Origin: Salpingoeca rosetta
Taxonomy: Eukaryota > Protista > Choanoflagellata
Assembly: GCA_033442325.1 (NCBI GenBank)
Contig: JAWQFM010000014.1
Coordinates: 571,312 to 635,311 of the forward strand
Direction of reading: 5' to 3'
Length of the DNA: 64,000 nucleotides
The notes under the pieces are model-generated. The model was not told the origin of the DNA. It saw nothing but the letters and a program-made list of their open reading frames with translations, and did no database searches. The translations under genes were made by a program, and so were the position numbers. Below, piece after piece: positions 23,439-42,580 of this stretch. The first letter of the stretch is position 1, and each line of letters begins with the position of its first letter.

Positions 23439-27484
<4,046 letters not shown>

Positions 27485-27812: not shown

Positions 27813-29536
27813 ATGGCGCTGGAGATGTCGTCGGGATATGGCGGCTATGGCGGCTATGGCGGTGGTCGCTTGTTTGTGTTTGTGCTGAGCGTGCTGGTCG
27901 CCCTCGCACAGCAGCCACACCTGCACCTCGCACGAGCCGACTGCCCCGACGATATTGGCGTCGACGACACGGTCGAGGTCAAGTCGTGTTCGGCCGGCAG
28001 TGCGTTCATTGTGACACAGGGCATGTTCAGCACCAGCAACGGCGACGACTACGCCATCGACGCCACAGGTGCATGCAATCACATTGACGTGCAAGCAACA
28101 AGCTTCGACGACTTTGAGCTCAACATCAAGAGCGGCGCAGAGATCGACACCATCGTCTTCACAGGCATGACAGCCGTCGACGACATGTACATCTTCGTGG
28201 ACGGCGACGTGTCGTCGAAGATTGAGTTCCCAAACCTGCAATCCGTGGACTGTCTCCGGATTGAGGCGGCGGTGGATGTGCCCCTCATCTCCTTTCCCTC
28301 CCTCAAAGCTGCGACCAACATCCACCTGGAAACGAAGAACGACGCCTCCCTCAGCGTCACCATCGGATCAAGCACCTCAAAGACGTATGTCATTGCTGTC
28401 ACTTCACATCAGCTCACCCCACCATGACATCGCCACACCCACACACTACCGCCCCGCCCCGCTGAGCATGTTGTCCACAGAGTCACTCAACAATCAACAC
28501 CAAAATCGCCTGTTCTCATGCACAAGCAATCTCACGACTGTGTTGTGCTTTTCATCCACGATCGCACATCATGCATGCCACATGCAGGTTTGAGACTGCA
28601 GGTGATGTGGAGATGGAGATTGATGGGGACATGGTCCTCAAGGTGTACGGAAATTGCGGAAGCATTGATCACCTGGACATGGACCGGGATGCAGGCGTTG
28701 GTTATGCCATATTCTACAACATGGCCGAAGTTGCGGAGGTCTCGCGCAACCACATCTTCAAGTGCTTAACGTACTGGGATAACAGGCGCACATCAAACCT
28801 CGAAAACAGCCATTGTGTGCCGCAGCAAACGACAACCACAGCAGTGTCACCAACGGCATCATCAACGGCACCCACCGACTTCATTGTTGGCGACGACATA
28901 TATGCGGTCAACGCTGGCGACAGCAACTCGTACACAGACACAGAGGGCCGCGTGTGGCAGCCCGCAGGCTCCTACATCCAAGGCAGCACGTTCGTCCAGA
29001 GCATCAACATCGCCAACACAAACGACGACACCCTGTACCAGTCAGAGAAGTACGCAAGCACGCTCAGGATGAACTTCCCCGTGACTCGCAACAAGTGGTA
29101 CCGCGTGTTTCTCCACTTTGCTGACATCTGCGAATGCACCGACCAGCCTGGAGAGCGCGTCTTTGACATTTACATTGAGGGCACGCTTGTGGAGAGTAAC
29201 GTGGACTTGACCGACAGTGTTGGGTGGGCCACGGCCACGGTGAAGGTGTTTGATGTGTACGCGGGTGACACGAACCTCGACATTGACTTCACCAGCTCTG
29301 CAAACAATGGCAAGATCAGTGCAGTGCGCATTGCACAGTTGGTGCCGGTCACATCGACAACAACAATGACAACCACACCGATGACAACAACAACCACATC
29401 AACCACTCTGGCCTCGAGCACGATGATGACAACAACTGCTGAAGAGGCGACAACAACCACAACAACAACAACCACGTCTACAACTACAACAACTACAACC
29501 ACGTCCACAACAACAACCACGTCTACAACGACAACG

Positions 29537-29594
<58 letters not shown>

Positions 29595-30091
29595 CCACCA
29601 CCACCACCACCACGACAACAACAACAACAACAACAGCAACAACAACTACAACTACAACAACAACAACAACAACCACCACCACCACGACGACGACAACAAC
29701 AACACCAACAGCAACAACAACTACAACTACAGCAACAACAACAACTACTACTACTACAACAACTACAACCACCACCACCACCACCACCACCACGACAGCG
29801 AAGTTGGCCACGTTGTCAACAGCGTCGCCCTCGGATCACATGAACCTGACGGCATCGACGTCCTCCTCGGCGCCAAGAGCCACCGACGTGACAGCACAGT
29901 CAACCTCAGAGCTCTCCACGCCAACGTCAACAGCAGCAGACATCAACCCGCAAACGAGTCGCAGCGGCAGCGGCAGCACGGACATGACGACCATCATTGT
30001 CGCCGTCGTCGCTGGCGCCATCGGTCTCATCGCCGGCATCTGTGAGTTTGTGGTTGTTGCGTGTGTGTGTGTGTTTGCTTGCATGTGTTTG

Positions 30092-30146
<55 letters not shown>

Positions 30147-30970
30147 GACATGTGCACTGTAGCGCAAGAATGCGCAATTGCGTGTTGTATGTGCGCAAGT
30201 TTTGTGTTCTTGTGCATGCTCTGGGCTATCCACATATGCAATGGCTCACACTCGCATGCCCAAAATCAACCACATGACACTGTATTCGTCTTCGTGCAGT
30301 GCTTGCCGTATTCGTTCGTGGTCGCAGCAAGCGCACGAAGCTGCCAAAGACCCGCACCACACCGCCCATCACCATGAACCCAACGTACGACCCGTCGCCC
30401 CGCTCGCGTCAGGATGGACTTGCAGGCGGCAAGATGAACATGGCCATGTATGACGACGAGTACGCTGACCCGAACGAGTGCCGCACGTACGAACAGCCTG
30501 TTGTCGGCCACGGCGGTGTTCAGGAGAACACATACGATGTACCAGATACGTCGTGGTCCGAGCAACCCTACATGGTGCCAACACCCGCCTCGAGCGTGAA
30601 AGGTATCCACAGCCACAGCGGCAGCAGCATTCGCAGCTCCATGCACCAGCAGCGACCACTGCCTCCACCTGGGTATGGCGTGCGCCTCCAGGACAGCAGC
30701 GAGAACGTGCATTACGATGTCGCTTCCCCATCAACGGCAACTGATGTGAACAGCTCTGCACGCACGGGGCAACCCCAGCTCCGCCTGTATGACAACTACC
30801 CAGCCGTTGCCAGCACCTGTGATGACGAAGACAGTGCTGAAGAAGGCGTTGACACCACAGACCGTGTGTATGAGACGCTTCCGCCCATCTACGACAATCT
30901 TGCGGTGTCTCCGAAAGCGAACCATCTCGTGCAACTGGGCGACGGCGCTGGCTTTGGCTTCGACGCTTAA
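27813..30970 (+). CDS. Type I membrane receptor A: signal peptide, L-domain/LRR-like repeats, malectin domain, Thr-rich stalk, TM, Tyr-rich kinase-less tail
   Basis: Exons 27813-28384, 28588-30041, 30300-30970 join in frame. Repeats FTGMTAV/FPNLQSV/FPSLKAA. Malectin YAVNAG..LYQSEKY..LHFAD..GERVFDIYIEG..KISAVRI. TM IIVAVVAGAIGLIAGILLAVFV followed by basic residues. Confidence 0.9.
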
Positions 30971-31844
30971 GGCTTCACGGTGCTATCAACACGCCATACC
31001 CCTCCACTGTGTTGTGTTGTGTTGTGTTGTGTGCTTGGAGCTGCGTTTGGATTTCCCGTGCCCTTCCTTCCCCCTCCTGCTTAATGTCAGCTGGACACGC
31101 TTCTCGTTGGGAGCCTGCAGCTGCCCGGCGTTTCATGCCTGCTTTCAGTTCCCCTGTCCCTTTGTTGTTCTCACCACTTCATGTTGTTACTGAATATCCA
31201 TGTTGTTGTCTTCTTCATGTTGTTTGCTCACACCAGGACTGGTGATGGGCTCCAGCGTTCGTTTCTTTTGTTATGCTTTCGCTTTCCTTGAGAGGAGTTC
31301 GCCACCACCCCCAGAAGACACCACAGACGAGCCGGCTCGCTGTGTAGTGCTGCTGCGTGTGTTGCTCCCAAAGACAGCGAAGCGCCATGGGCCAGAAGCT
31401 CTGGCAAACCCCTTCTGCTACCTGCCTTGCTTGTGTTCTTTCTTTGCATTCTGCTGTTCGCGCTTTCTGCTTTGCTGCTTTAACGCTTCAGAGAGGGTGT
31501 TCCCTCATCGAGCGAGCCACCTCGTACAGCAGTGAACAAATGCGAACAGAGAGAAAGAGAGAGAGAGAAAGTGCAAGCAAGTCAACGCAGAGCGGCCTGC
31601 TGGAGACACGCTCTCATGAATGAGTAGGCAAATGACGTGATGAGGCGAGGGCGAGAACGTAAAACGCGCCGGAAATGCACGCAGGTTCCCACGGCGCCAA
31701 CGAGTTGGTGCAGCCGAAATGTGATGGAAGACGTCAACGAACACCGCCATTTTGCTTGCAAGCAACAGCAGGCGCTGTAAACTGCTTCCCACAGCCACGC
31801 CAATTACTTCTGCTGCTGCTGCAAAAGCAACCATCCCAAAGAGC

Positions 31845-32487
31845 ATGCGACGTTTGTTTGTGCTTGTTGGGGTGCTGGCGCTGGCGGTGCTGCTGTGCGC
31901 GAGCGAGCTGCACCTGGTGCACGCACACGGCGATGGCGGAGACGATGGCGAAGAAGAAGGCCGCGGTGGTGGTGGAGAGGGTGGAAGCAGCAGCACCTGC
32001 CCTTCCTCAATCGACCCCGACGACACGGTCGAAGTCAAGTCGTGTTCGGCCGGCAGTGCGTTCATTGTGACACAGGGCATGTTCAGCACCAGCAACGGCG
32101 ACGACTACGCCATCGACGCCACAGGTGCATGCAATCACATTGACGTGCAAGCAACAAGCTTCGACGACTTTGAGCTCAACATCAAGAGCGGCGCAGAGAT
32201 CGACACCATCGTCTTCACAGGCATGACAGCCGTCGACGACATGTACATCTTCGTGGACGGCGACGTGTCGTCGAAGATTGAGTTCCCAAACCTGCAATCC
32301 GTGGACTGTCTCCGGATTGAGGCGGCGGTGGATGTGCCCCTCATCTCCTTTCCCTCCCTCAAAGCTGCGACCAACATCCACCTGGAAACGAAGAACGACG
32401 CCTCCCTCAGCGTCACCATTGGATCAAATACGTCTCACACGTGCGTTTCTTATCCCTGCACAAATCATGTGAATGGATTTGCTCAGT

Positions 32488-32570
<83 letters not shown>

Positions 32571-33689
32571 TGGCAGCCTGTTGTCAGTCTGCCTGCTTAT
32601 GTCCGTGTCTATCGAAATGCAGCATGATTGGCCAATGCCGTGTCTGCTCTGTGGTTTGTGTAGTCCCTTCTTTGCCATTGCTGATGGCTTCTTCACTGGG
32701 ACAACTCGACGACACGCTCTCTGGCATCTGCTTACATGTCTCATCACATCACTGCTTCCGTCCATCCTGCCTCCCAACCATGTGTACTTTTGCGGCTAGG
32801 TTCGAGTCCGCGAGCGATGTGGACATGGAGATTGATGGCGACATGAACTTGAAGCTGTATGGCAAGTGTGGTTCCATTGGCGCGCTGAACATGGACCGGA
32901 GCAGCGGTTCCGGAACGGCAGAATTCTTCCACATGCGCGAAGTGGCAGATATCTCGCGCAGCAGCTTCGAATGCAAAACGTACTGGGACGGCGCATTCAA
33001 GTTCGCATCCAGCTTGCTGAACAGCAACTGCCAAGTCGGCGTAACAACCATTGTACCCTCTGTGGCGCCATGGACAAGCTCAACTGCCTCCGCAGCCAGT
33101 ACTACAACAACCACAGCGTCAATGTCAACGTCCATGTCCCCCGCAGCCCTCCCCAATGTCCCCACCGACTTCATTGTTGGCGATGATGTATATGCGGTCA
33201 ACGCTGGCGACAGCAACTCGTACACAGACACAGAGGGCCGCGTGTGGCAGCCCGCAGGCTCCTACATCCAAGGCAGCACGTTCGTCCAGAGTATCAACAT
33301 CGCCAACACAAACGACGACACCCTCTACCAGTCAGAGAAGTACGCAAGCACGCTCAGGATGAACTTCCCCGTGACTCGCAACAAGTGGTACCGCGTGTTT
33401 CTCCACTTTGCTGACATCTGCGAATGCACCGACCAGCCTGGAGAGCGCGTCTTTGACATTTACATCGAGGGCACGCTTGTGGAGAGTAACGTGGACTTGA
33501 CCGACAGCGTTGGGTGGGCCACGGCCACGGTGAAGGTGTTTGATGTGTACGCGGGTGACACGAACCTCGACATTGACTTCACCAGCTCTGCAAACAATGG
33601 CAAGATCAGTGCAGTGCGCATTGCACAGTTGGTGCCGGTCACATCGACAACAACAATGACAACCACACCGATGACAACAACAACTTCTA

Positions 33690-33731
<42 letters not shown>

Positions 33732-34921
33732 CCACGTCTACAACTACACCAACTACAACTACAACAACAACAACAACCACGTCTACAACGACAACAACGA
33801 CCACCATGATTGTTACGTTGTCCACAGCGTCGCCCTCAGATCACATGGACCTCACAGCGTCAACGTCCGCCTCAGCGCCACCGACCACATCTGACGCACA
33901 AGAGTCGACAACTGCGACCACAGTCAGCTCAACGCCCCCCAACCAGAACATCAACCCACAAACGAGCCGCAGCGGCAGCGGCAGCACGGACATGACGACC
34001 ATCATTGTCGCCGTCGTCGCTGGCGCCATCGGTCTCATCGCCGGCATCCGTGAGTTTGTGTGCGTGTGTGTGTTTGTCTCTGTGTGTGCGTGTGTGCTTG
34101 CATGTCTGTGTGTGTGTTTGCATGTGTGCTTGCATGTGTCTGTGTCTGCGTCTGTGTTTGTGTTTGCATGCGTGCACGCATGTCGTTGCGTTTGTTTGTG
34201 CGTTGCGGTGGTATTTTGTCCATGCAACCCATCTTCATACTCTGACACAAACTGCCACTTGCCACGTGTCACATGACATGCAGTGCTTGCGGTGTTTGTT
34301 CGCCGCCGGAAGAAGCGTACACGGCTGTCCAAGACCCGCACCACACCACCCGTCTCCATGAACCCAACGTACGAAGAGTGCGCGAGCGACAATGACGGGC
34401 TTGCTGGCGGCAAGATGAACATGGCCATGTTCGACTACGAGTACGCTGACCCGAACGAGTGCCGCACGTACGAACAACCTGTGGTCGGTCACCTCGCGCA
34501 GCTGCACAAAGGTTCCGCCTGGGCAGAAAACGCCTATGCCATGCCTGCTTCACAGCCCATCCAGCACGCGAAAGCCAATGAATACGAGGTGCCTGTGTCC
34601 TCGGCAGCCAAGCACACTGCAGCAGCAAGCACGACGGTGTACGACATGGCCTCACCCGACACACCTGCAGCTACAGCGCCTGAGTATGACTTGGCCTCAC
34701 CCCACACAACTGCAGCTACAGCGCCTGAGTATGACTTGGCCTCACCCCACACAACTGCAGCAACAGCGCCTGAGTATGACATGGGTGACGAGGGTACGGG
34801 AGATGATGCCTACGCGACAGTCGCCCCTCCTGGCTGCACATATGACAACGTGGTGCTGTCAAAGACTGGGGAGCAGAGGATGCAGTTAAACGACGCAGAT
34901 GACTTTGGGTTCGATGCATGA
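31845..34921 (+). CDS. Type I membrane receptor B, tandem paralog of receptor A with the same architecture
   Basis: Exons 31845-32440, 32800-34049, 34284-34921, with the same intron positions and phases as A and near-identical L-like, malectin and TM blocks. Confidence 0.9.
34640..34784 (+). repeat. 45-bp coding tandem repeat (about 3.2 copies) encoding YD(L/M)ASPxTxAATAPE in the receptor B tail
   Basis: Units start at 34640, 34685, 34730 and 34775. Confidence 0.95.
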
Positions 34922-35411
34922 AGTGGCACAAAGATGATGGCTTGTCGCAGCATATCATCTCGATTGTGTGTGTGTGTGTGTTGATTTTTTTGTTGCTCGT
35001 GATGTTGTTGATCTGTTTGCATTGCGTCCACCCTCTCGAATGCGTACTCGTGTTTCCATTGCATGCGCGCGTCTTCTTTCAGTCTTCTTCATTTGCTCTT
35101 TCCTCCCTTTGACTTTCTTGCTTGTTTTGTCGTTCAGTGTCGCTCTGACTGCTGAAATTGTATCCTCGTTCCTAAGCACGAAATTGCCTGCTGTTCCACG
35201 TTCCACCTTTCCTTGCTGCGTTGCCCGAGCCCTGCTTTCTTTTTAAGTATCGTTGGTGAGTTGCATCATGTTTCAAACATGCCTTCTGTTCTGCTCTTGT
35301 GGTTTACTTCATATCAGTTCTGTTCCATTACACGCGCTTACAAGCAGTCACAGAACCCATACCCAACACTCTTGAAACAGAACAGCACGCACACGCACGG
35401 CACTCTCTGTC

Positions 35412-35767
35412 CTACAGAGTGAGGAAGTCAATGTCCTCATGGTCCGAGGATGCATCAAAGTCACTGCTGTCAGCACCAGCAACAACACCACCGCCCACGC
35501 CGTTGTGTCCTTGACGTTCAGCGAGTTGTGCTCGTTGTCCTGCTCTTATTGGCGTCTTCTTGCGCCTGGCTGATGATGACGGTGATGGTGTTGGTTGACC
35601 AAGGACACGCGCGACCTTGCTGTCATTGCGGCGCTGATTATCGGAGAACGTGTCATCCGCATCGTCAAATGTCGCCAATGCCTGCAAGCATCAAGGATGG
35701 GCGGCGTGCCATACATAAAGGGGCGAGGGACGACACAAAATGATGAGGCAAGGATAGCATGTGGCAT

Positions 35768-35828
<61 letters not shown>

Positions 35829-37025
35829 CGTGCGCAAGGTTTACCAACCACTGGTGTCGATTCCGTGGCAACTTCGTGCAGCACAACTGAGGACGATGAA
35901 GAAGATGATGATATGGCGTCCGCTAATGACGATGACGATGGCGAGCGCGCTGCCAGTGCCGCCATGCGTGCTTGAATCGCAGAGGACGCATCGCGGCCAG
36001 GAAACACAGGCAACACGGGCTTCCTTGGAGTCTTGTGCGTCGACGAGGGTGAAGACGGGTGCACGGTCGCGGCCGCCTTGGGCCGTGTTGCGGTGGTGCC
36101 ACGTGATGCACCCGCTGTTGTGTTGACCGGTGGCAATTTACCGACATGGGGAGTGTGAGCAGGGTGTGCGGGGCGAGCAGGCGACACATCTGCACTCGAC
36201 GGTTCACTCCACACGCGATCACGCATGACGCCTTCATCAAGATCAAAGGGACCGGCAGAGGCTGCTGTTGTGGGTGATGTTGGCGTCATTGCAGATGGAG
36301 AAGGCAGATGCCGGCCTTTCTTCGGCTTCCTTGTTAGCTTGCTCTTTGGGCGTCGTTCACGGTGCTGCTGGTGCTGGCGCTGCTGCTGGTGCTGCGCTGC
36401 CGCTCGCGTGTTTCCTTCCATTGGCAGCGCCTGTGGGAGCGGTGAAGATGGCGGTGACAGCCGTGACGCACCAGCATCATCGCCATCATCAACACTTCCT
36501 GTTGTTGGTGGTGTTGTCGATGCTGTTGTTGCTGCCTTGTGTTCTGAGGCGCGTTTGGTCACTTTCGCGCGCTTTGCTGCCAGGGTGTCGCCGTCACGCG
36601 CTGCGCTGGCCCTGTGCTTCTTCGCACCTTTACCTGTTCTCGCTGAGGCAACACTCGACGACGGTGCGGCTGATGTGGATCGCGGCGCCCGTCGCAATGG
36701 GGTGGAGCCGCTAGCGGAACGAGACAACGACGCCGCTGATACCGTTTCTCCGCTGGACAAGAGCTCATCTTCGCCCTCTGCTGCAGCGAGTGTGGCGTGG
36801 TAGGCCATGACAGACGCGTGGGCCATTCGCGTGTTGTCGCTGTTTCCGTTGACGTCGTCGTGCACAACAATGATGTCTGCGCCTCCTTCTTCCAAAAAGT
36901 CCATCTCCTCATCAACGTCATCACCAACCATGGTATCAGCCCCTCCTTTCCTTCTACAGTGTCCCGACTTCCGTGCCTGGCTCTTGGCTGATTTTTTCTT
37001 CTGTTTCCCCCTCTGCTGCTGCTGC

Positions 37026-37082
<57 letters not shown>

Positions 37083-38458
37083 CTCCTTTTGCTGCTACTG
37101 TTGACTCTGCGCGCCTTTGGAGTGCTGCTGGCCGAGCGGCGGGAAAACTGTGGCGAAGACGGAGGTGTGATGCCGTCAACAGCACCATCGTCGACATCAG
37201 CACGCGCACCAGTTCCACGCGGCCGTGACACGCTCGAGGTGGACGATACGTCCGAATCCCCACGCTTCCCTTTCCCCCTCGACCCACGTCGTGTCTTCTC
37301 CCGGGATGATGTCCGCTTTGATGACGACGCTGCTGTTGCTGTTGTTGCTACTGATGCTGTTGTTGAAGTGGTTGTTGATCGCCGTCGGGTGCGCTGGCGG
37401 GATGTGGCTGCTTCGCTTGAGTGTGGCGATGACAGCAGTGCATCATCACCTTCATCAAAGTCCTCCTCCTTCACATCACGATCTGTGATTGCCATTGCGC
37501 TGCGCTGCCGCTGCTGCCGTTGTTGGCGTTGTTGGCGTTGGTGTGTGTGAGGGGCGTGTTGCTGGTCAGGTGCAGCCGTTGCGATGGTGCCTGCAGCCAT
37601 CAGCACCATGGCTTTGCCATCGCTCGACCTGAGCAGCTTCCCTGCCCGGTCAGGGGTGCGCATGCCACCACGGCCTGATGAAGCTGGGCGTGCCGTGGTG
37701 GTTGAGGTGGGCGTGGCCGCAGTCGTGTCACTACTCGCCTGCAACAAAGGCGTTCGTTTCATGTCTTCATCGCCAGCGTATGCACGCCGGACAGAGCGGC
37801 GCGAGCGAGAGGACCGCGAGTGGCGCACGTCTGCTGCAATGCTGTCACTATCACCACCCAGGTGCCCAAGGTCCTCGTCTTTCACGGCAGCAGACGACTG
37901 CGGAGGCGCACTGCCTGTGCTGCCGTTGGTGTGGAGGCGTAGAGGATGAAATGCAGAGGACGCGTTGGCCACGCGATGAAACGCAGATTGCGCCACTCGA
38001 CTAACACCACGAGCCTGGTGGTGCTGTCGCTGCTGTTGATGTTGCTGATGTTGCTGATGTTGCTGTTGCAGTGGATTTCTTACCCACTTGAGCTGCCATG
38101 CATCTGTGGTGTCTACTGTTGCGGTGCTTGTTGCTGGCGGGCGACCAACAGCCATCCCACTGCCACCACCACCACTGGCACCGCCACTGGCACGACCCCC
38201 ACGCTGCCGCTGGTGCTCTTGCTGCTCTTGCTGCTGTTGTTGTGGTCGCCGTGTGCTGCTGCGGTGTGCGGGCAGCGGGCGCTCGCACTCGGCCGCGTGT
38301 GCGTATGCAAACGAGTGTGGGCGTGGGGGGAACCAGACCGGGTTTGAGTACAGGGGCGGGTCTGACACGAGGAGGCGAAAGGGAAACAGCGGCGCCAGAA
38401 ACGGATGCTGCAGTGCTTCCAACGGCGTCATGCGCTTGGCTACAACACCAGTACACAC

Positions 38459-38522
<64 letters not shown>

Positions 38523-39282
38523 ATGCACGTGCAAGCGGGAATGACAAACAAGACACAGTGCTCGATTCGCGATGGAACTCACAAGGCGCGGGATGGAGCA
38601 TGCCAGCAAGGAAGCTGGCAAAGCTTGGGTGGTTGAAGTGAAGATGCTCCTGAAGCCGTGATGCAAGGGCCGCGTGCCTGCAGGCAACGACGAAAAAAAA
38701 AAAGCGGAGACCATTGTGATGAATCGTCACGGAAAGGGGGGGGGGGATTGTCGCCCCATAGTATTGTATTTTGCTCTGTTTCGGCGTGGTGTGTGTGTGT
38801 GTGTGTGTGTGTGTAAGTGTGTGTCCGTCATGGTGCAGGGGAGGCGCGTGCGATATGGGCATACATGCGGTCGAGCGGTTCGTGTGGCGTTGAGGGCCGG
38901 CTGTCCACGTGCTGGGAGAACTGCAACAACAGCAGTGGAGGGAATACAGTGGTGAGCAACCCGACAATCGCCAGGAACTGCAGCACATTATGTGGTTGCG
39001 TGCGCGAATGCATCGCACACACAAATACACACGCACGCACTCACTGAATGCACACACGCACATGCACATACACACATGCACATGCACACACACGTACACA
39101 TACGCATGCAAGGTGCGCACCCTGGCGTAGAATTTGCCTGCGGTGTACATGTGTGGCAGGTGTCCTGTCAGTGCGACGATGCTGCTGACGACGTCATCCG
39201 GTGTTGAGCCGCCAAACGGGACGCGACCAAGCAGCAGCTGGAAAGGGGCGGTGGGGGAGGGGAGATGAAGAGAGAGAGAGAG

Positions 39283-39316
<34 letters not shown>

Positions 39317-41850
39317 AGTGTATGTGTGTATGTGTGTCAGTGAGAGAGTGTGTATGTGTGTTTGTGTGTATGTGCATGTGTGTCAGTGTGAGAGTGTGTG
39401 TATGTGTGTATGTGTGTATGTGTGTATGTGTGTATGTGAGTGGGAACCATGTGCATCGTTTCAATGTTCACTGGTGCAAGCTATCTTGTACGTGCAGGTA
39501 TGCTGTACCTCGAGCAAGATGCAACCGGCTGACCACATGTCAATCTCCGGACCAAAAGGAATGCCAAAGTACACCTGTGCATGAAATACAACACGCGAGT
39601 ACGCGTGCACGTGAGCGTGCATCACGGTTTGAGTCCAGGCACGAGTCCAGACGTTCGCCACAACAAGACTACAACCATCGCCATGATCACAGCTGCCACT
39701 ACCGCCACCAATAACAGATACTGCGATACTTGTCACCTCTGGTGCACGATAGAGCGGTGTCTGGATGTCAAACGAGTCGTAGTATGGAGCAACAGCCTCC
39801 TCCGTGTTGCTGATGGCATTGCCAAAGTCAGCAACTTTGATGAAGCACGAGTTGGCGGCGTCTGCGGTGATGAGCGGTTGTGATGAGTGGTTGTGATGAG
39901 TGGTAGTGACGAGTGGTGGTGATGGTGTTCATGGTGAGCAGCAAGTTTGGTAGCATGGGAAAATAGGTAGTGGGAAACCACACAACATTGGTTGTTGCCG
40001 TACAGCAGCACAGACATACACACGTAGAAACACACAAACACATGCATCCATCAGCACACACGCGCGCATACGCAGACACACACACACACACACACACACA
40101 CGCACGCACACACGCAAACACATACACACACACGCACGCACCATCACGGAGGAGAACGTTGTCTGGTTTAAGATCGGCGTGGATGATGTTGGCATGACGA
40201 AACACGGCCTAAGGGAATTGAACGCACACGTGCACGTGCACACATGCACACAAATATCAGACGCACGACACGAGAAGAAAGGTGATGATGTGGCGTTCAC
40301 GCGCACACGCGAGATGCCATGATGTGACACAATGACAACAACACGTGCAAGGCGGCAAGCGCTGTGTGTACATGTGCATATATGACACGTACGAGCGCAG
40401 TCAGAAGCTGGGCGGCCACCTTGCGCACAGCCTGTAACTTGAGACTCGCTGTCTCATACGCAACAACACAGCACAATTTAGAAGTGAGAGTGTGTGTGTG
40501 AGTGAGTGAGTGCGAGTAAGAGAGAGAGAGAGTGTATGTGTGTGTGTGTGTGCGTGAGTGCGTGTGCGTGTGCGTGAGTGTGTGTGTGTGCGTGCTCATC
40601 ACACACCAAAGTGCACGACACTGCAGTGGTTGAACAGATGATTGTAACTTCCGCGCACACCACGCACACGCATGCGCGCGCATACGCACACACGCAGACC
40701 TGTGTTTGCTGCTTTGGTATTTGTGAACTGCGACGCTGTTTCCACTGCATGTTTCAGCTGTGTTGATGACAGCAACTGCACCATGGAACGTGTGATTCAC
40801 GTGTGCACGTGTGTGTATGCGCGTGTATGCGCGTGTATGTGTGTGCGCGCGCGCGTGTGTGTGTGTGTACACGTGAGACAAGACAACGGATGAAAGAAAG
40901 GTCGTGGAGATGAACGAAACACAAAATCAACACGTCAGCAGGACAAGCACGCACCTCGAACACGATGCAAAAGTGACCTGCAAACTCAAACGTGTTGATG
41001 CAGCGGACAACATGACATGTGCTGCGGTACAACGCGAACAGAAAACGGAATCATCGCTGTGTGCGTGAGCTTCGATGGATGAGGAGGGAGGTACCACTAA
41101 GGCATACATTCCACAAAAACACATGCATGCGAACAAGCATGCACTTGCACGTGGACACCTGCACAAAAACACAAACACACACATGCACACACACGCACGC
41201 ACACACAAACGCACACATGCACACCAACAAACAAAATGCACACCAACAAACAAACATGCACACACACACGCAAAGTACGCACTCTAGCGGGTCAAGGGTG
41301 TTGAGCTGGCGTGTGACGGTTGCTTCGTGTGAGCCCAGCTGTGCAAACTGGGCGTGCATGATCTTGATAGCGACGTGACTGTGGGTGGGGCAGTAGGTAT
41401 CCTCGGCGCGGATCAGGAGCGCAAAACCGCCACGCCCAATGCTGCGCAGATACCGGTATCTCCCACCGAGCAAAGGCACTGCCCATCCCCAGCAAAGCAA
41501 CAAGAAATCAGCGAACCAGCGAACCAGCGAACCAGCGATGCTGAGGGGAGATGGACAGACAACTGACTGTGACACGGCACGCGGGATGCACGCAGACGCA
41601 TGATGTGCACCGCGTCCAATAACACCACTCCCACTCCATACTGTGCTCCGCATCTCCTCCGCATTGTCACTACACGCTCACCTGGAGGCACAGGCTGAAA
41701 GCAGCCATCTTCGGCAGTCAGGCGACTCAGATCTACTCCCCGCAAAACACCAAGGACACCAGCAACAGTGTCACAGTGAGTGCGTAAACCAATAACCAAC
41801 CGAAGCACAGCCAGACATTGGAGGCGTTCAACGCTTTCAGGCTCCGCCAT
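35412..41850 (-). CDS. CMGC protein kinase (DYRK/PRP4/SRPK-like) with a disordered C-terminal extension of about 1000 aa
   Basis: Spliced motifs [84 protein letters not shown]. Start may be 41850 or 41928; the last exon is inferred. Confidence 0.85.
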
Positions 41851-42580
41851 GAACAACCACGACAACCTGCACAAACTAAAGCGGCATGTGGGCCAACCAC
41901 TCCCAACTTTTCGTCGCCACAGAGACATGCCATCACGACTTCACTGTGCTACACGCCACCTTCTTGCTGCTCCTGCTTTGGCTGTTGGTGTTGTGCTCGT
42001 CCATGGTGTGCGCCGTCATCGCGCTGCTGTGCCACAGACGAGTACAGCTGCGTCAACCCAGCCGTTGCCCGGCTCACAACGTTCGCCATAGCTACACTTT
42101 ATGGTGTCGGCTGGAGCGTGCCTTGATGGTGCCTTGACACTCCTACACAAATCCTTGACACTACAGACTACTCCTCCATACTTCTGTTTTGGTGTTCCGA
42201 GGTTCCTTGCTTGTTCGAATAGTCGAATGGTGTGTTCTGCTCTGCTCTGCTCTGTAAGTCTAGTAAGTATGGTGAGCTTGTCTGGTGTGTTCTGCTGAGC
42301 TTGTCTTGTCGACATCCCTTCTCCTCTCCTCTGCATGTTCTCCACGCGCCTGCAACGCGCTGGCACTCGACCTTCAACTGACACGCTCTCTACTTCCAGT
42401 ACTTCTCTTGCTCCTCTGCCTCTGTCAGAGCCCTCGAGCCCAAGAGCCCTCCTCACATCTTGCTCTTATCAGTTGGTCAGTTTGTGTATTCGTCACACGT
42501 AGCAAACTTCCTCCCAGTGCCGTACATTCATCCTTGGATGCGTCATGTAACCATTCACACACACACAGAGACACCCGCGT

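What the first reader, a model, noticed from the sequence alone, without database searches (positions are those of the whole stretch)
27813..34921. Tandem kinase-less L-domain/malectin/mucin receptors with 12-tyrosine tails: candidate glycan-sensing pTyr signalling system
Seen: both proteins have a signal peptide, ~23-aa L-domain/LRR-like repeats, a malectin carbohydrate-binding domain, a Thr stalk, one TM and a ~200-aa tail with 12 Tyr each and no catalytic domain. Tails contain NPTY (PTB/endocytic NPxY), YxxP (YDVP, YEVP, YMVP; Crk/Nck-type) and YxN (YDNL, YDNV; Grb2-type). LRR+malectin ectodomains are known from plant receptor kinases; coupling to an SH2-docking tail resembles animal immunoreceptor logic. 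Inference: surface lectin receptors for bacterial or self glycans, relayed by cytoplasmic tyrosine kinases.
Basis: partly seen in the sequence, partly recalled or inferred. Interest (0 to 1): 0.8.

Follow-up and report, generated by a model that had tools for sequence, protein, structure and literature searches.

The report
Tandem lectin-mucin receptors with tyrosine-rich tails
Two neighbouring genes of the choanoflagellate Salpingoeca rosetta encode cell-surface proteins with a beta-helix "adhesin head", a malectin sugar-binding domain, a threonine mucin stalk, and a disordered tail whose 12 tyrosines sit in non-random, kinase/SH2-style contexts. They are plausible but untested kinase-less receptors of the substrate-attached cell type.

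Summary
Window 27813-30970 and 31845-34921 carry two three-exon genes with GT..AG introns. They are an 898-aa gene and PTSG_05203 of Salpingoeca rosetta. Both encode type I membrane proteins. Each has a signal peptide, a ~225-aa beta-solenoid with ~23-aa rungs, a malectin domain (Pfam 1e-21), a poly-Thr stalk and one TM. The tails are 217 and 206 aa, with exactly 12 Tyr each and no Pfam domain, and are predicted disordered.

One correction: the N-domain is not a detectable L-domain or LRR. Its model matches bacterial DUF2807 "adhesin head" beta-helices (Z 12.3), against insulin-receptor L1 at Z 6.0-6.5.

The tail tyrosines are not random. An acidic residue follows 8/12 and 9/12 of them (shuffle p<5e-5), and Pro lies at +3..+5 in 8/12 and 9/12. 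Eight Tyr columns are invariant between otherwise diverged tails. NPTY, four YxxP per tail and YDN[LV] are confirmed. There is no canonical ITAM or ITIM.

Published RNA-seq lists PTSG_05203 as upregulated in thecate (attached) cells, not rosettes. RNA contigs show the Thr stalk is kept in the mRNA, contrary to the deposited 754-aa model.

Phosphorylation, sugar binding and localisation remain untested. I rate this a new domain combination of a known kind, of moderate interest.

The parts
27813..28384 (+). Gene 1 exon 1: signal peptide (aa 1-43) and the first ~147 aa of the beta-helix N-domain
   Evidence: Model. The exon 1/2 junction is seen as loose ends and a bridging insert in RNA. Hydropathy.
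28588..30041 (+). Gene 1 exon 2: last rungs of the N-domain (to ~28819), malectin domain (~28877-29347), poly-Thr mucin stalk (~29348-29980) and the start of the TM (from 29987)
   Evidence: Pfam Malectin 1.4e-21. 129 Thr in the stalk. Model.
30300..30970 (+). Gene 1 exon 3: end of the TM (to 30316) and a 217-aa cytoplasmic tail with 12 Tyr (30317-30967), then the stop codon
   Evidence: Junction 30041>30300 is supported by 81 and 121 reads whose loose ends match the end of exon 2. Tyr list. Predicted disorder.
30971..31540 (+). Gene 1 3' UTR (about 570 nt)
   Evidence: Stranded RNA depth of 360-650 continues to ~31490. Contigs end at 31538 and 31541.
31845..32440 (+). Gene 2 (PTSG_05203) exon 1: signal peptide, an acidic Gly-rich spacer and the first part of the beta-helix N-domain (from ~31998)
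   Evidence: The stretch 32018-32427 is 99.5% identical to gene 1 27962-28371.
32800..34049 (+). Gene 2 exon 2: divergent last rungs of the N-domain (to ~33031), a Ser/Thr linker, the malectin domain (~33164-33637), the Thr stalk (~33638-33988) and the start of the TM (from 33995)
   Evidence: Junction 32440>32800 (GT..AG) appears in RNA contigs and one read. Pfam Malectin 1.1e-21. Contigs run through the annotated donor at 33609.
34284..34921 (+). Gene 2 exon 3: end of the TM (to 34300) and a 206-aa tail with 12 Tyr (34301-34918), including three tandem APEYD[LM] units, then the stop codon

Best explanation
These are two old tandem paralogues, partly homogenised by gene conversion. They encode type I plasma-membrane glycoproteins of Salpingoeca rosetta.

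Outside the cell, a right-handed beta-helix of the DUF2807 'adhesin head' type and a malectin (CBM57) carbohydrate-binding domain sit on a long, presumably O-glycosylated poly-Thr stalk. This part most likely binds a polysaccharide or glycoprotein of the substrate, the theca or bacteria.

Inside the cell, an acidic, intrinsically disordered tail of about 210 aa has no enzyme domain. It offers a membrane-proximal NPTY and eleven further tyrosines, mostly Y-[D/E/A]-x-x with Pro at +3 to +5. The inferred mechanism is that ligand-driven clustering exposes these tyrosines to cytoplasmic tyrosine kinases, and the phosphorylated sites recruit SH2/PTB proteins. The NPxY and YxxPhi motifs may also drive endocytosis.

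What is shown:
- the gene structures
- transcription
- domain identities
- topology by hydropathy and the positive-inside rule
- predicted tail disorder
- the non-random, conserved tyrosine contexts
- thecate-biased expression of PTSG_05203

What is inferred:
- surface localisation
- glycan binding
- tyrosine phosphorylation
- the downstream partners
For: Architecture. N-domain fold: the AF2 model has pTM 0.70, with pLDDT about 90 over residues 11-140. It matches five DUF2807 crystal structures at Z 12.3-8.8, with rmsd 2.8 A over 161 residues for 3lyc. ESM Atlas gives DUF2807 and DUF4097 at TM 0.55-0.56, and Pfam gives a weak DUF2807 hit at E 0.003. One DUF2807 protein, PGN_1547 of P. gingivalis, behaves as an adhesin (PMC10949514).

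Selection: dN/dS between the paralogues is 0.04 for malectin and 0.26-0.29 for the N-domain.

Tail: disordered. Tyr makes up 5.5-5.8% of it, against 2-3 Phe and 1 Trp per tail. An acidic residue at +1 occurs in 8/12 and 9/12 tyrosines, against shuffle means of 1.6-1.75 (p<5e-5). Pro at +3..+5 has p=0.004 and 0.00015. Eight Tyr columns are invariant between the tails. In the diverged distal part, 5 of 8 Tyr are conserved against 34 of 144 other residues (Fisher p=0.027). The proximal tail has dN/dS 0.39 at dS 0.58.

A second S. rosetta protein with the same N-domain (P0004) also has a Thr stalk, a TM and an NPVY. It carries ankyrin repeats instead of the Tyr tail. So the ectodomain module is coupled to different cytoplasmic scaffolds.

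Expression: PTSG_05203 has FPKM 123-261 in attached cells, 69 in swimmers and 11-38 in colonies. The log2 fold change attached/colony is 3.5 (P=1.6e-12) (PMC4054682 supplement). Both genes are transcribed from the + strand. S. rosetta has active phosphotyrosine signalling (PMC11984502), and distinct subsets of tyrosine kinases are upregulated in thecate cells (PMC4054682).
Against: There is no direct evidence of phosphorylation, SH2/PTB binding, sugar binding or plasma-membrane localisation.

No orthologue with this tail was found, so Tyr conservation rests on two paralogues. Three of gene 2's tyrosines come from one recently triplicated unit and are not independent.

Two of the four alignable malectin ligand-contact residues are changed (Y116 to C, F117 to E).

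The N-domain model rests on a four-sequence alignment, and its C-terminal third has low confidence.

The published FPKM for PTSG_05203 may include reads from gene 1, because long stretches of the two genes are near-identical.
Confidence: 0.5

Rival explanations
1. These are structural or adhesive mucins of the thecate cell, involved in attachment or theca assembly, with no signalling role. In this reading the tail tyrosines are only sorting signals (NPxY for PTB-type clathrin adaptors, YxxPhi for AP-2) that control surface level and recycling.
For: The beta-helix adhesin-head fold and the long mucin stalk. Co-listing with collagen, vWA, FAS1 and C-type-lectin genes among thecate-upregulated genes. 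NPTY in both tails, plus YETL and YDNL in gene 1 and YATV and YDNV in gene 2.
Against: Only 2-3 of the 12 tyrosines per tail fit YxxPhi. The dominant context is Y-[D/E]-x-x-P or ASP, which is not an AP-2 signal but is typical of kinase/SH2 sites. Twelve tyrosines are far more than sorting needs.
Confidence: 0.25
2. These are receptors for prey or bacterial cues. The lectin ectodomain recognises bacterial polysaccharide, and the NPxY plus Tyr tail drives engulfment, in the manner of Draper/CED-1/MEGF10.
For: A malectin/CBM57 domain whose best sequence matches here are bacterial-looking proteins (P0002 39% and P0003 36% identity). NPxY combined with a distal YxxL/V pair. The second half of the N-domain diverges between the paralogues (47 of 78 residues identical, dN 0.32), as expected for a ligand-facing surface.
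Against: Expression is highest in attached cells and 5-10 fold lower in rosettes and chains, which also feed. There is no canonical ITAM. No localisation data exist.
Confidence: 0.15
3. These are orthologues of the animal ER lectin malectin, acting in glycoprotein quality control.
For: The only Pfam family is Malectin. PDB hits are to Xenopus and human malectin (E 6e-9 and weaker).
Against: ER malectin is a ~290-aa protein with no other ectodomain and only a short anchor. These proteins add a beta-helix domain, a 120-210-aa mucin stalk and a ~210-aa tail. Y116 and F117 of the Glc2 site are replaced. The match to bacterial-type malectin domains (70 bits) is stronger than to Xenopus malectin (39 bits).
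Confidence: 0.03

Closest known systems
Multi-tyrosine, kinase-less transmembrane scaffolds of animals (nephrin YDxV sites, ephrin-B tails, beta-dystroglycan; also the YxxP-rich substrate domain of p130Cas). This comparison is from established knowledge and was not tested here.
   Same: A single-pass protein with an adhesive ectodomain. A disordered tail without enzyme activity. Many Tyr in Y-D/E-x-V/P contexts, an NPxY, and a conserved C-terminal end (FGFDA in both paralogues).
   Different: There is no sequence homology. The ectodomain modules are unrelated to Ig, cadherin or ephrin folds. Phosphorylation is unproven, and the organism is a choanoflagellate.
Bacteroidales DUF2807 / 'head GIN' putative adhesins (PDB 3lyc, 3ljy, 3jx8, 3pet, 4ygu; PGN_1547 of P. 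gingivalis)
   Same: A right-handed single-stranded beta-helix of similar size: Z 12.3-8.8, rmsd 2.6-2.9 A, 119-163 residues aligned.
   Different: Sequence similarity lies below the Pfam cut-off (17.7 vs 24.2 bits). A profile of the N-domain finds no PDB chain by sequence. The context is eukaryotic: cysteines, an intron inside the domain, and fusion to malectin, mucin and a TM.
Malectin (ER lectin of animals) and plant malectin / malectin-like receptor kinases (CrRLK1L, LRR-malectin RLKs)
   Same: A PF11721 malectin domain on the lumenal or extracellular side of a single-pass membrane protein. Like the plant proteins, it is combined with a solenoid repeat domain at the cell surface (PMC8287233).
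   Different: There is no kinase domain and no LRR by Pfam. Y116 and F117 of the diglucose site are replaced. A mucin stalk and a Tyr-rich tail are added.
P0004, an S. rosetta paralogue of the N-domain on scaffold GL832982.1
   Same: The same lineage-restricted N-domain (phmmer E 4e-9), then a Thr-rich stalk, a TM and an NPxY.
   Different: It has no malectin domain. Its cytoplasmic part carries ankyrin repeats rather than a multi-Tyr tail.

Membership tests
Malectin domain (Pfam PF11721 / CBM57) | Profile match above the curated cut-off | tested here: met
   77.5 and 78 bits against a cut-off of 23, covering profile positions 2-144 of 163. Also phmmer to Xenopus malectin 2k46 at E 7e-9.
Malectin domain (Pfam PF11721 / CBM57) | Diglucose-contact residues of Xenopus malectin (Y67, Y89, Y116, F117, D186; listed in PMC7783096, citing Schallus 2008/2010) | tested here: not met
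   Read off the alignment with a chain offset of 23: Y67 to F, Y89 kept, Y116 to C, F117 to E. D186 lies outside the aligned stretch.
ER malectin orthologue | Architecture of signal peptide, malectin domain and a short C-terminal anchor, about 290 aa, with no other domain | tested here: not met
   898 and 827 aa, with an extra beta-helix domain, a mucin stalk and a ~210-aa tail.
Receptor L domain (PF01030) | Profile match; L-domain-type beta-helix as the best fold match | tested here: not met
   No Pfam hit even at E<=10. Insulin-receptor L1 gives Z 6.0-6.5 at rmsd ~4 A over ~131-142 residues, against Z 12.3 for DUF2807. The only lead is a language-model feature score of 0.89 to bacterial Recep_L_domain clusters.
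Leucine-rich repeat | An LRR profile match | tested here: not met
   No LRR family in Pfam at E<=10. FSH-receptor LRR gives Z 7.1, and an Atlas LRR cluster gives TM 0.47. Both are at the generic solenoid level.
DUF2807 / head GIN adhesin domain (PF10988) | Profile match above the cut-off | tested here: inconclusive
   E 0.003 and 17.7 bits against a cut-off of 24.2, over profile positions 7-139 of 181.
DUF2807 / head GIN adhesin domain (PF10988) | The same fold as the solved family members | tested here: met
   3lyc Z 12.3, 3ljy 11.6, 3jx8 10.7, 3pet 9.9 and 4ygu 8.8, with unrelated beta-helices at Z about 8. An Atlas DUF2807 cluster gives TM 0.56/0.54.
Plant malectin/LRR receptor kinases | A cytoplasmic protein kinase domain | tested here: not met
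   No Pfam family in either tail. The tail is predicted disordered.
Immunoreceptor-type tails (ITAM/ITIM) | YxxL/I-x6-8-YxxL/I, or [SIVL]xYxx[ILV] | tested here: not met
   The regex search finds none. Only a relaxed Val-type pair, YATV-x6-YDNV, occurs in gene 2.
Phosphotyrosine docking scaffold (functional class) | Tyrosines phosphorylated in vivo and bound by SH2/PTB domains | not testable with these tools
   Only the sequence context could be tested: NPTY, 4 YxxP per tail, YDN[LV], acidic +1 enrichment at p<5e-5. No S. rosetta phosphoproteome covering this protein was found.
Mucin-type stalk | A long Ser/Thr/Pro-rich, O-glycosylated segment between the ectodomain and the membrane | tested here: inconclusive
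   The composition fits: 129 Thr and 9 Ser in aa 443-604 of gene 1, and gene 2 is similar. The segment is retained in mRNA. Glycosylation itself cannot be tested here.

The most novel reading that the evidence does not exclude
This would be a choanoflagellate-specific receptor class. Two modules typical of bacterial surface proteins, a DUF2807-type adhesin head and a CBM57/malectin domain, were joined to a eukaryotic mucin stalk and to an animal-style multi-site phosphotyrosine scaffold (NPxY plus YxxP/YDxx). The receptor is switched on when the cell settles and builds its theca. It would be a kinase-less link from adhesion or glycan contact to the large tyrosine-kinase/SH2 network of choanoflagellates. 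That would give the network, whose physiological inputs are largely unknown, a concrete upstream receptor that can be tested genetically.
Probability: 0.25. Interest if true: 0.75.

Novelty: new variant of a known kind. Interest (0 to 1): 0.5.

Why it matters
Choanoflagellates carry tyrosine-kinase, SH2 and phosphatase repertoires as large as those of animals. Very few physiological receptors or substrates of that network are known.

This is a well-expressed, cell-type-regulated pair of surface lectin proteins whose tails look like multi-site pTyr scaffolds. It is a concrete candidate in an organism where CRISPR editing, tagging and cell-type induction are established.

The pair also shows how a lineage-restricted ectodomain module (three S. 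rosetta genes and one environmental relative) is combined with different cytoplasmic scaffolds, a Tyr tail or ankyrin repeats. And it corrects the public model of PTSG_05203.

If the tails turn out to be only sorting signals, the genes are ordinary adhesion mucins of the thecate stage.

Tried and rejected
- Receptor L-domain or LRR identity of the N-domain: rejected as a family assignment. Only a sub-threshold language-model lead remains.
- Foldseek against the PDB gave nothing significant for the N-domain. VIA-align was needed.
- A profile of the N-domain against PDB sequences found no hits.
- Relatives of the tail: two word-index searches (P0001 regions 520-754 and 549-680) found only the query. 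Atlas features and structure gave only noise, at <=0.81 and TM<0.3. The 898-aa gene 1 protein was not returned either, so that index apparently lacks it.
- Bacterial or archaeal close relatives of the malectin domain: the genome-contig scan found none.
- Literature by locus tag: no paper text names PTSG_05203 or PTSG_05202. The supplements of the 2025 thecate/iron paper do not hold them.
- An SH2 gene inside the window: the six-frame scan for the FLVRES-type motif was negative.
- Pfam on ORFs of the large downstream minus-strand gene: nothing.
- ITAM/ITIM reading of the tail: rejected.

Full report
**What is there**

The stretch is eukaryotic, with GT..AG introns that hold (GT)n and (CTGT)n microsatellites. 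Splicing the long ORFs gives two clean three-exon genes on the + strand.
- Gene 1: 27813-28384, 28588-30041, 30300-30970 (898 aa).
- Gene 2: 31845-32440, 32800-34049, 34284-34921 (827 aa).

The organism is Salpingoeca rosetta. Gene 2 is PTSG_05203, annotated "Malectin domain-containing protein". The assembly GCA_000188695.1 also calls an 898-aa gene exactly at gene 1.

**Transcription and the gene models**

I laid two stranded RNA-seq runs and two spliced contig sets on 30000-34950.
- Reads ending at 30300 carry the last 16 bases of gene 1 exon 2 (81 and 121 reads).
- Reads and contigs carry the gene 1 exon 1/2 junction.
- The gene 2 junction 32440>32800 (GT..AG) is present.
- Gene 1 has a ~570-nt 3' UTR, ending near 31540.

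The deposited PTSG_05203 model (754 aa) removes 33609-33827 as an intron. That deletes the Thr stalk and the last malectin strand (ISAVRIAQL). No run shows this junction. A gene-2-specific contig with no mismatches runs 64 nt past the supposed donor, and another starts 17 nt before the supposed acceptor, both at exon-like depth. The 827-aa model is therefore preferred. The contigs do break inside the low-complexity stretch, so a minor spliced isoform is not excluded.

In paralogue-specific stretches the two genes differ strongly between runs. Gene 1 exceeds gene 2 by over 300-fold in X21 and about 20-fold in X22. In X4 the depths are comparable, and in X10 gene 2 stands at roughly 40-50% of gene 1.

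**Domains**

Hydropathy gives one N-terminal signal and one TM per protein. The TM is followed by a strongly basic stretch (RGRSKRTK in gene 1, RRRKKRTR in gene 2), so the C-terminal tail is cytoplasmic.

Malectin (PF11721) is solid at 1e-21. It aligns to Xenopus malectin. Of the diglucose-contact residues named in PMC7783096, Y67 becomes F, Y89 is kept, and Y116 and F117 become C and E. Ligand specificity therefore cannot be transferred.

The stalk holds 129 Thr in gene 1 and about 71 in gene 2. Each ectodomain has only one N-glycosylation sequon.

**The N-domain**

Pfam finds no L-domain or LRR, only a sub-threshold DUF2807 match (E 0.003). An exhaustive phmmer search of 1.84 billion representatives finds just two relatives.
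- P0004 is another S. rosetta protein. It has the N-domain, a Thr stalk, a TM, an NPVY and ankyrin repeats.
- P0005 comes from environmental contigs. Its intron sits at the same position inside the domain.

An AlphaFold model built on this small alignment has pTM 0.70 and pLDDT about 90 for residues 11-140. It is a beta-solenoid with rungs every 22-24 residues.

Structure comparisons:

| Comparison | Result |
|---|---|
| VIA-align, 48,161 PDB representatives: DUF2807 "putative adhesin" structures (3lyc, 3ljy, 3jx8, 3pet, 4ygu) | Z 12.3 to 8.8 |
| Best of these, 3lyc | rmsd 2.8 A over 161 residues |
| Generic beta-helices | Z about 8 |
| Insulin-receptor L1 | Z 6.0-6.5 |
| FSH-receptor LRR | Z 7.1 |
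| ESM Atlas, DUF2807 and DUF4097 clusters | TM 0.55-0.56 |
| Language-model features, bacterial Recep_L_domain clusters | 0.89 (lead only) |

I therefore call it a DUF2807-type beta-helix, distantly L-domain-like at best. One DUF2807 protein has experimental adhesin behaviour (PMC10949514).

**The tail**

The tails are 217 and 206 aa with net charge -10 and -14. Each has 12 Tyr (5.5-5.8%), 2-3 Phe and 1 Trp. There is no Pfam family, and AlphaFold gives pLDDT 44 with no secondary structure.

Motifs present:
- NPTY, 24 residues after the TM, in both tails.
- Four YxxP per tail: YADP, YEQP, YDVP and YMVP in gene 1; YADP, YEQP, YAMP and YEVP in gene 2.
- YDNL and YDNY in gene 1, YDNV in gene 2.
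- Y[DE]x[AV]SP, once in gene 1 and three times in gene 2. Two of those three lie in a triplicated APEYD[LM] unit.
- Two PPxY in gene 1 only.
- No ITAM, ITIM or di-leucine motif.

Shuffling each tail 20,000 times gave these results.

| Context | Gene 1 | Gene 2 | Shuffle mean | p |
|---|---|---|---|---|
| Acidic residue at Y+1 | 8/12 | 9/12 | 1.6 / 1.75 | <5e-5 (both) |
| Pro at +3..+5 | 8/12 | 9/12 | 3.3 / 2.7 | 0.004 / 0.00015 |

Gene 2's repeat units are not independent.

The two tails are about 85% identical for the first ~70 residues and barely alignable after that. Even so, eight Tyr columns are invariant. In the distal part, 5 of 8 Tyr are conserved against 34 of 144 other residues (p=0.027). 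The last five residues (FGFDA) are identical.

This is what one expects of kinase-substrate and SH2/PTB docking sites. It does not prove them.

**Evolution of the pair**

Unconverted segments have dS 0.6-1.2. Exon 1 of the N-domain and the malectin domain have dS 0.05-0.06. So this is an old duplication with recent gene conversion. That agrees with the scan's other note on this stretch (s1-432601).

dN/dS is 0.04 for malectin, 0.26-0.29 for the N-domain and 0.39 for the proximal tail. The last rungs of the N-domain are the variable part (47 of 78 residues identical). The upstream regions are unrelated, which fits the different expression of the two genes.

**Published context**

The supplement of Fairclough et al. 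2013 (PMC4054682) gives these FPKM values for PTSG_05203.

| Sample type | FPKM |
|---|---|
| Attached (thecate), three samples | 123, 216, 261 |
| Swimmers | 69 |
| Rosettes and chains | 11-38 |

The log2 fold change is 3.5 for attached/colony (P=1.6e-12) and 1.85 for attached/swimmer (P=2.6e-5). The held file carries the label "colonial", but its header columns are Attach/Colony and Attach/Swim.

The same paper reports that thecate cells preferentially upregulate choanoflagellate-specific genes and a distinct subset of tyrosine kinases. S. rosetta shows inhibitor-sensitive global phosphotyrosine signalling (PMC11984502). A review notes only that choanoflagellate malectin domains sit in "different protein contexts" (PMC8287233). 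I found no functional study of these genes.

**Verdict**

The interpretation, a kinase-less lectin receptor with a pTyr-docking tail, is the best-supported mechanism. I give it about 0.5, because phosphorylation, ligand binding and localisation are all inferred. The link to rosettes or prey is not supported by the expression data, which point to the thecate, substrate-attached stage.

The main rival is an adhesion mucin whose tyrosines are only sorting signals.

The domain combination appears unique to S. rosetta and close environmental relatives. The functional type, an adhesive ectodomain with a multi-Tyr scaffold tail, is known from animals. Hence "new variant of a known kind", with moderate interest.

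Noticed in passing
window 33609-33827: The deposited PTSG_05203 model (754 aa) splices out this in-frame 219-nt stretch, which holds the Thr stalk and the last malectin beta-strand. No RNA run shows that junction, and gene-2-specific contigs run through both supposed splice sites. The public model is probably wrong.
   Followed up: yes
window 27962-28371 vs 32018-32427; 28871-29340 vs 33161-33630: Patches of 99.5% and about 98.5% DNA identity (dS 0.05-0.06) lie inside paralogues that are otherwise at dS 0.6-1.2. This indicates recent gene conversion of N-domain exon 1 and the malectin domain. The last N-domain rungs, the introns and the distal tails escaped it.
   Followed up: yes
window 30300-31540 vs 34300-34921: The two paralogues are expressed very differently between RNA data sets. 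Gene 1 exceeds gene 2 by over 300-fold and about 20-fold in two 2026 runs, with comparable depths in X4 and gene 2 at roughly 40-50% of gene 1 in X10. Their upstream regions share no similarity. The conditions of the runs are not known to me.
   Followed up: partly
L001:3001-7643 (S. rosetta scaffold GL832982.1): P0004 is a 768-aa protein with the same lineage-restricted N-domain, a Thr-rich stalk, a TM, an NPVY, a Gln-rich region and ankyrin repeats. It is the same ectodomain module joined to a different cytoplasmic scaffold.
   Followed up: partly
L003:1473-2615 and L004 (ENA metagenome contigs): An environmental relative of the N-domain (P0005) has an intron at the same position inside the domain. 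It probably comes from an uncultured choanoflagellate. The contigs end before any malectin or tail could be seen.
   Followed up: partly
window 32489-32575 and 30050-30150: A long (GT)n microsatellite lies in gene 2 intron 1, and (CTGT)n/(GT)n tracts lie in intron 2 of both genes. The (ACA/ACC)n coding repeat of the stalk differs by about 95 codons between the paralogues and is likely length-polymorphic.
   Followed up: no
PMC4054682 supplementary file 11: The held copy is labelled 'upregulated in colonial cells', but its header columns are log2Fold(Attach/Colony) and (Attach/Swim). It is really the thecate-upregulated list. Captions and contents seem shifted by one file.
   Followed up: partly
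not in the window (PTSG_05198, a few genes upstream on the same scaffold): In the same supplement, an SH2-domain gene has read counts of 61/30/63/73 in attached and swimmer samples against 1/8/13/0 in colony samples. That is a similar solitary-cell bias. It is only a weak lead for a partner.
   Followed up: no
window ~23439-27484 (-) and ~35412-42089 (-): The flanking genes are an ODAD1/CCDC114-type outer-dynein-arm docking protein upstream (Pfam ODAD1_CC on record) and a 1320-aa Gln/Ser-rich gene downstream. The downstream gene has no Pfam match in the exons I scanned.
   Followed up: partly
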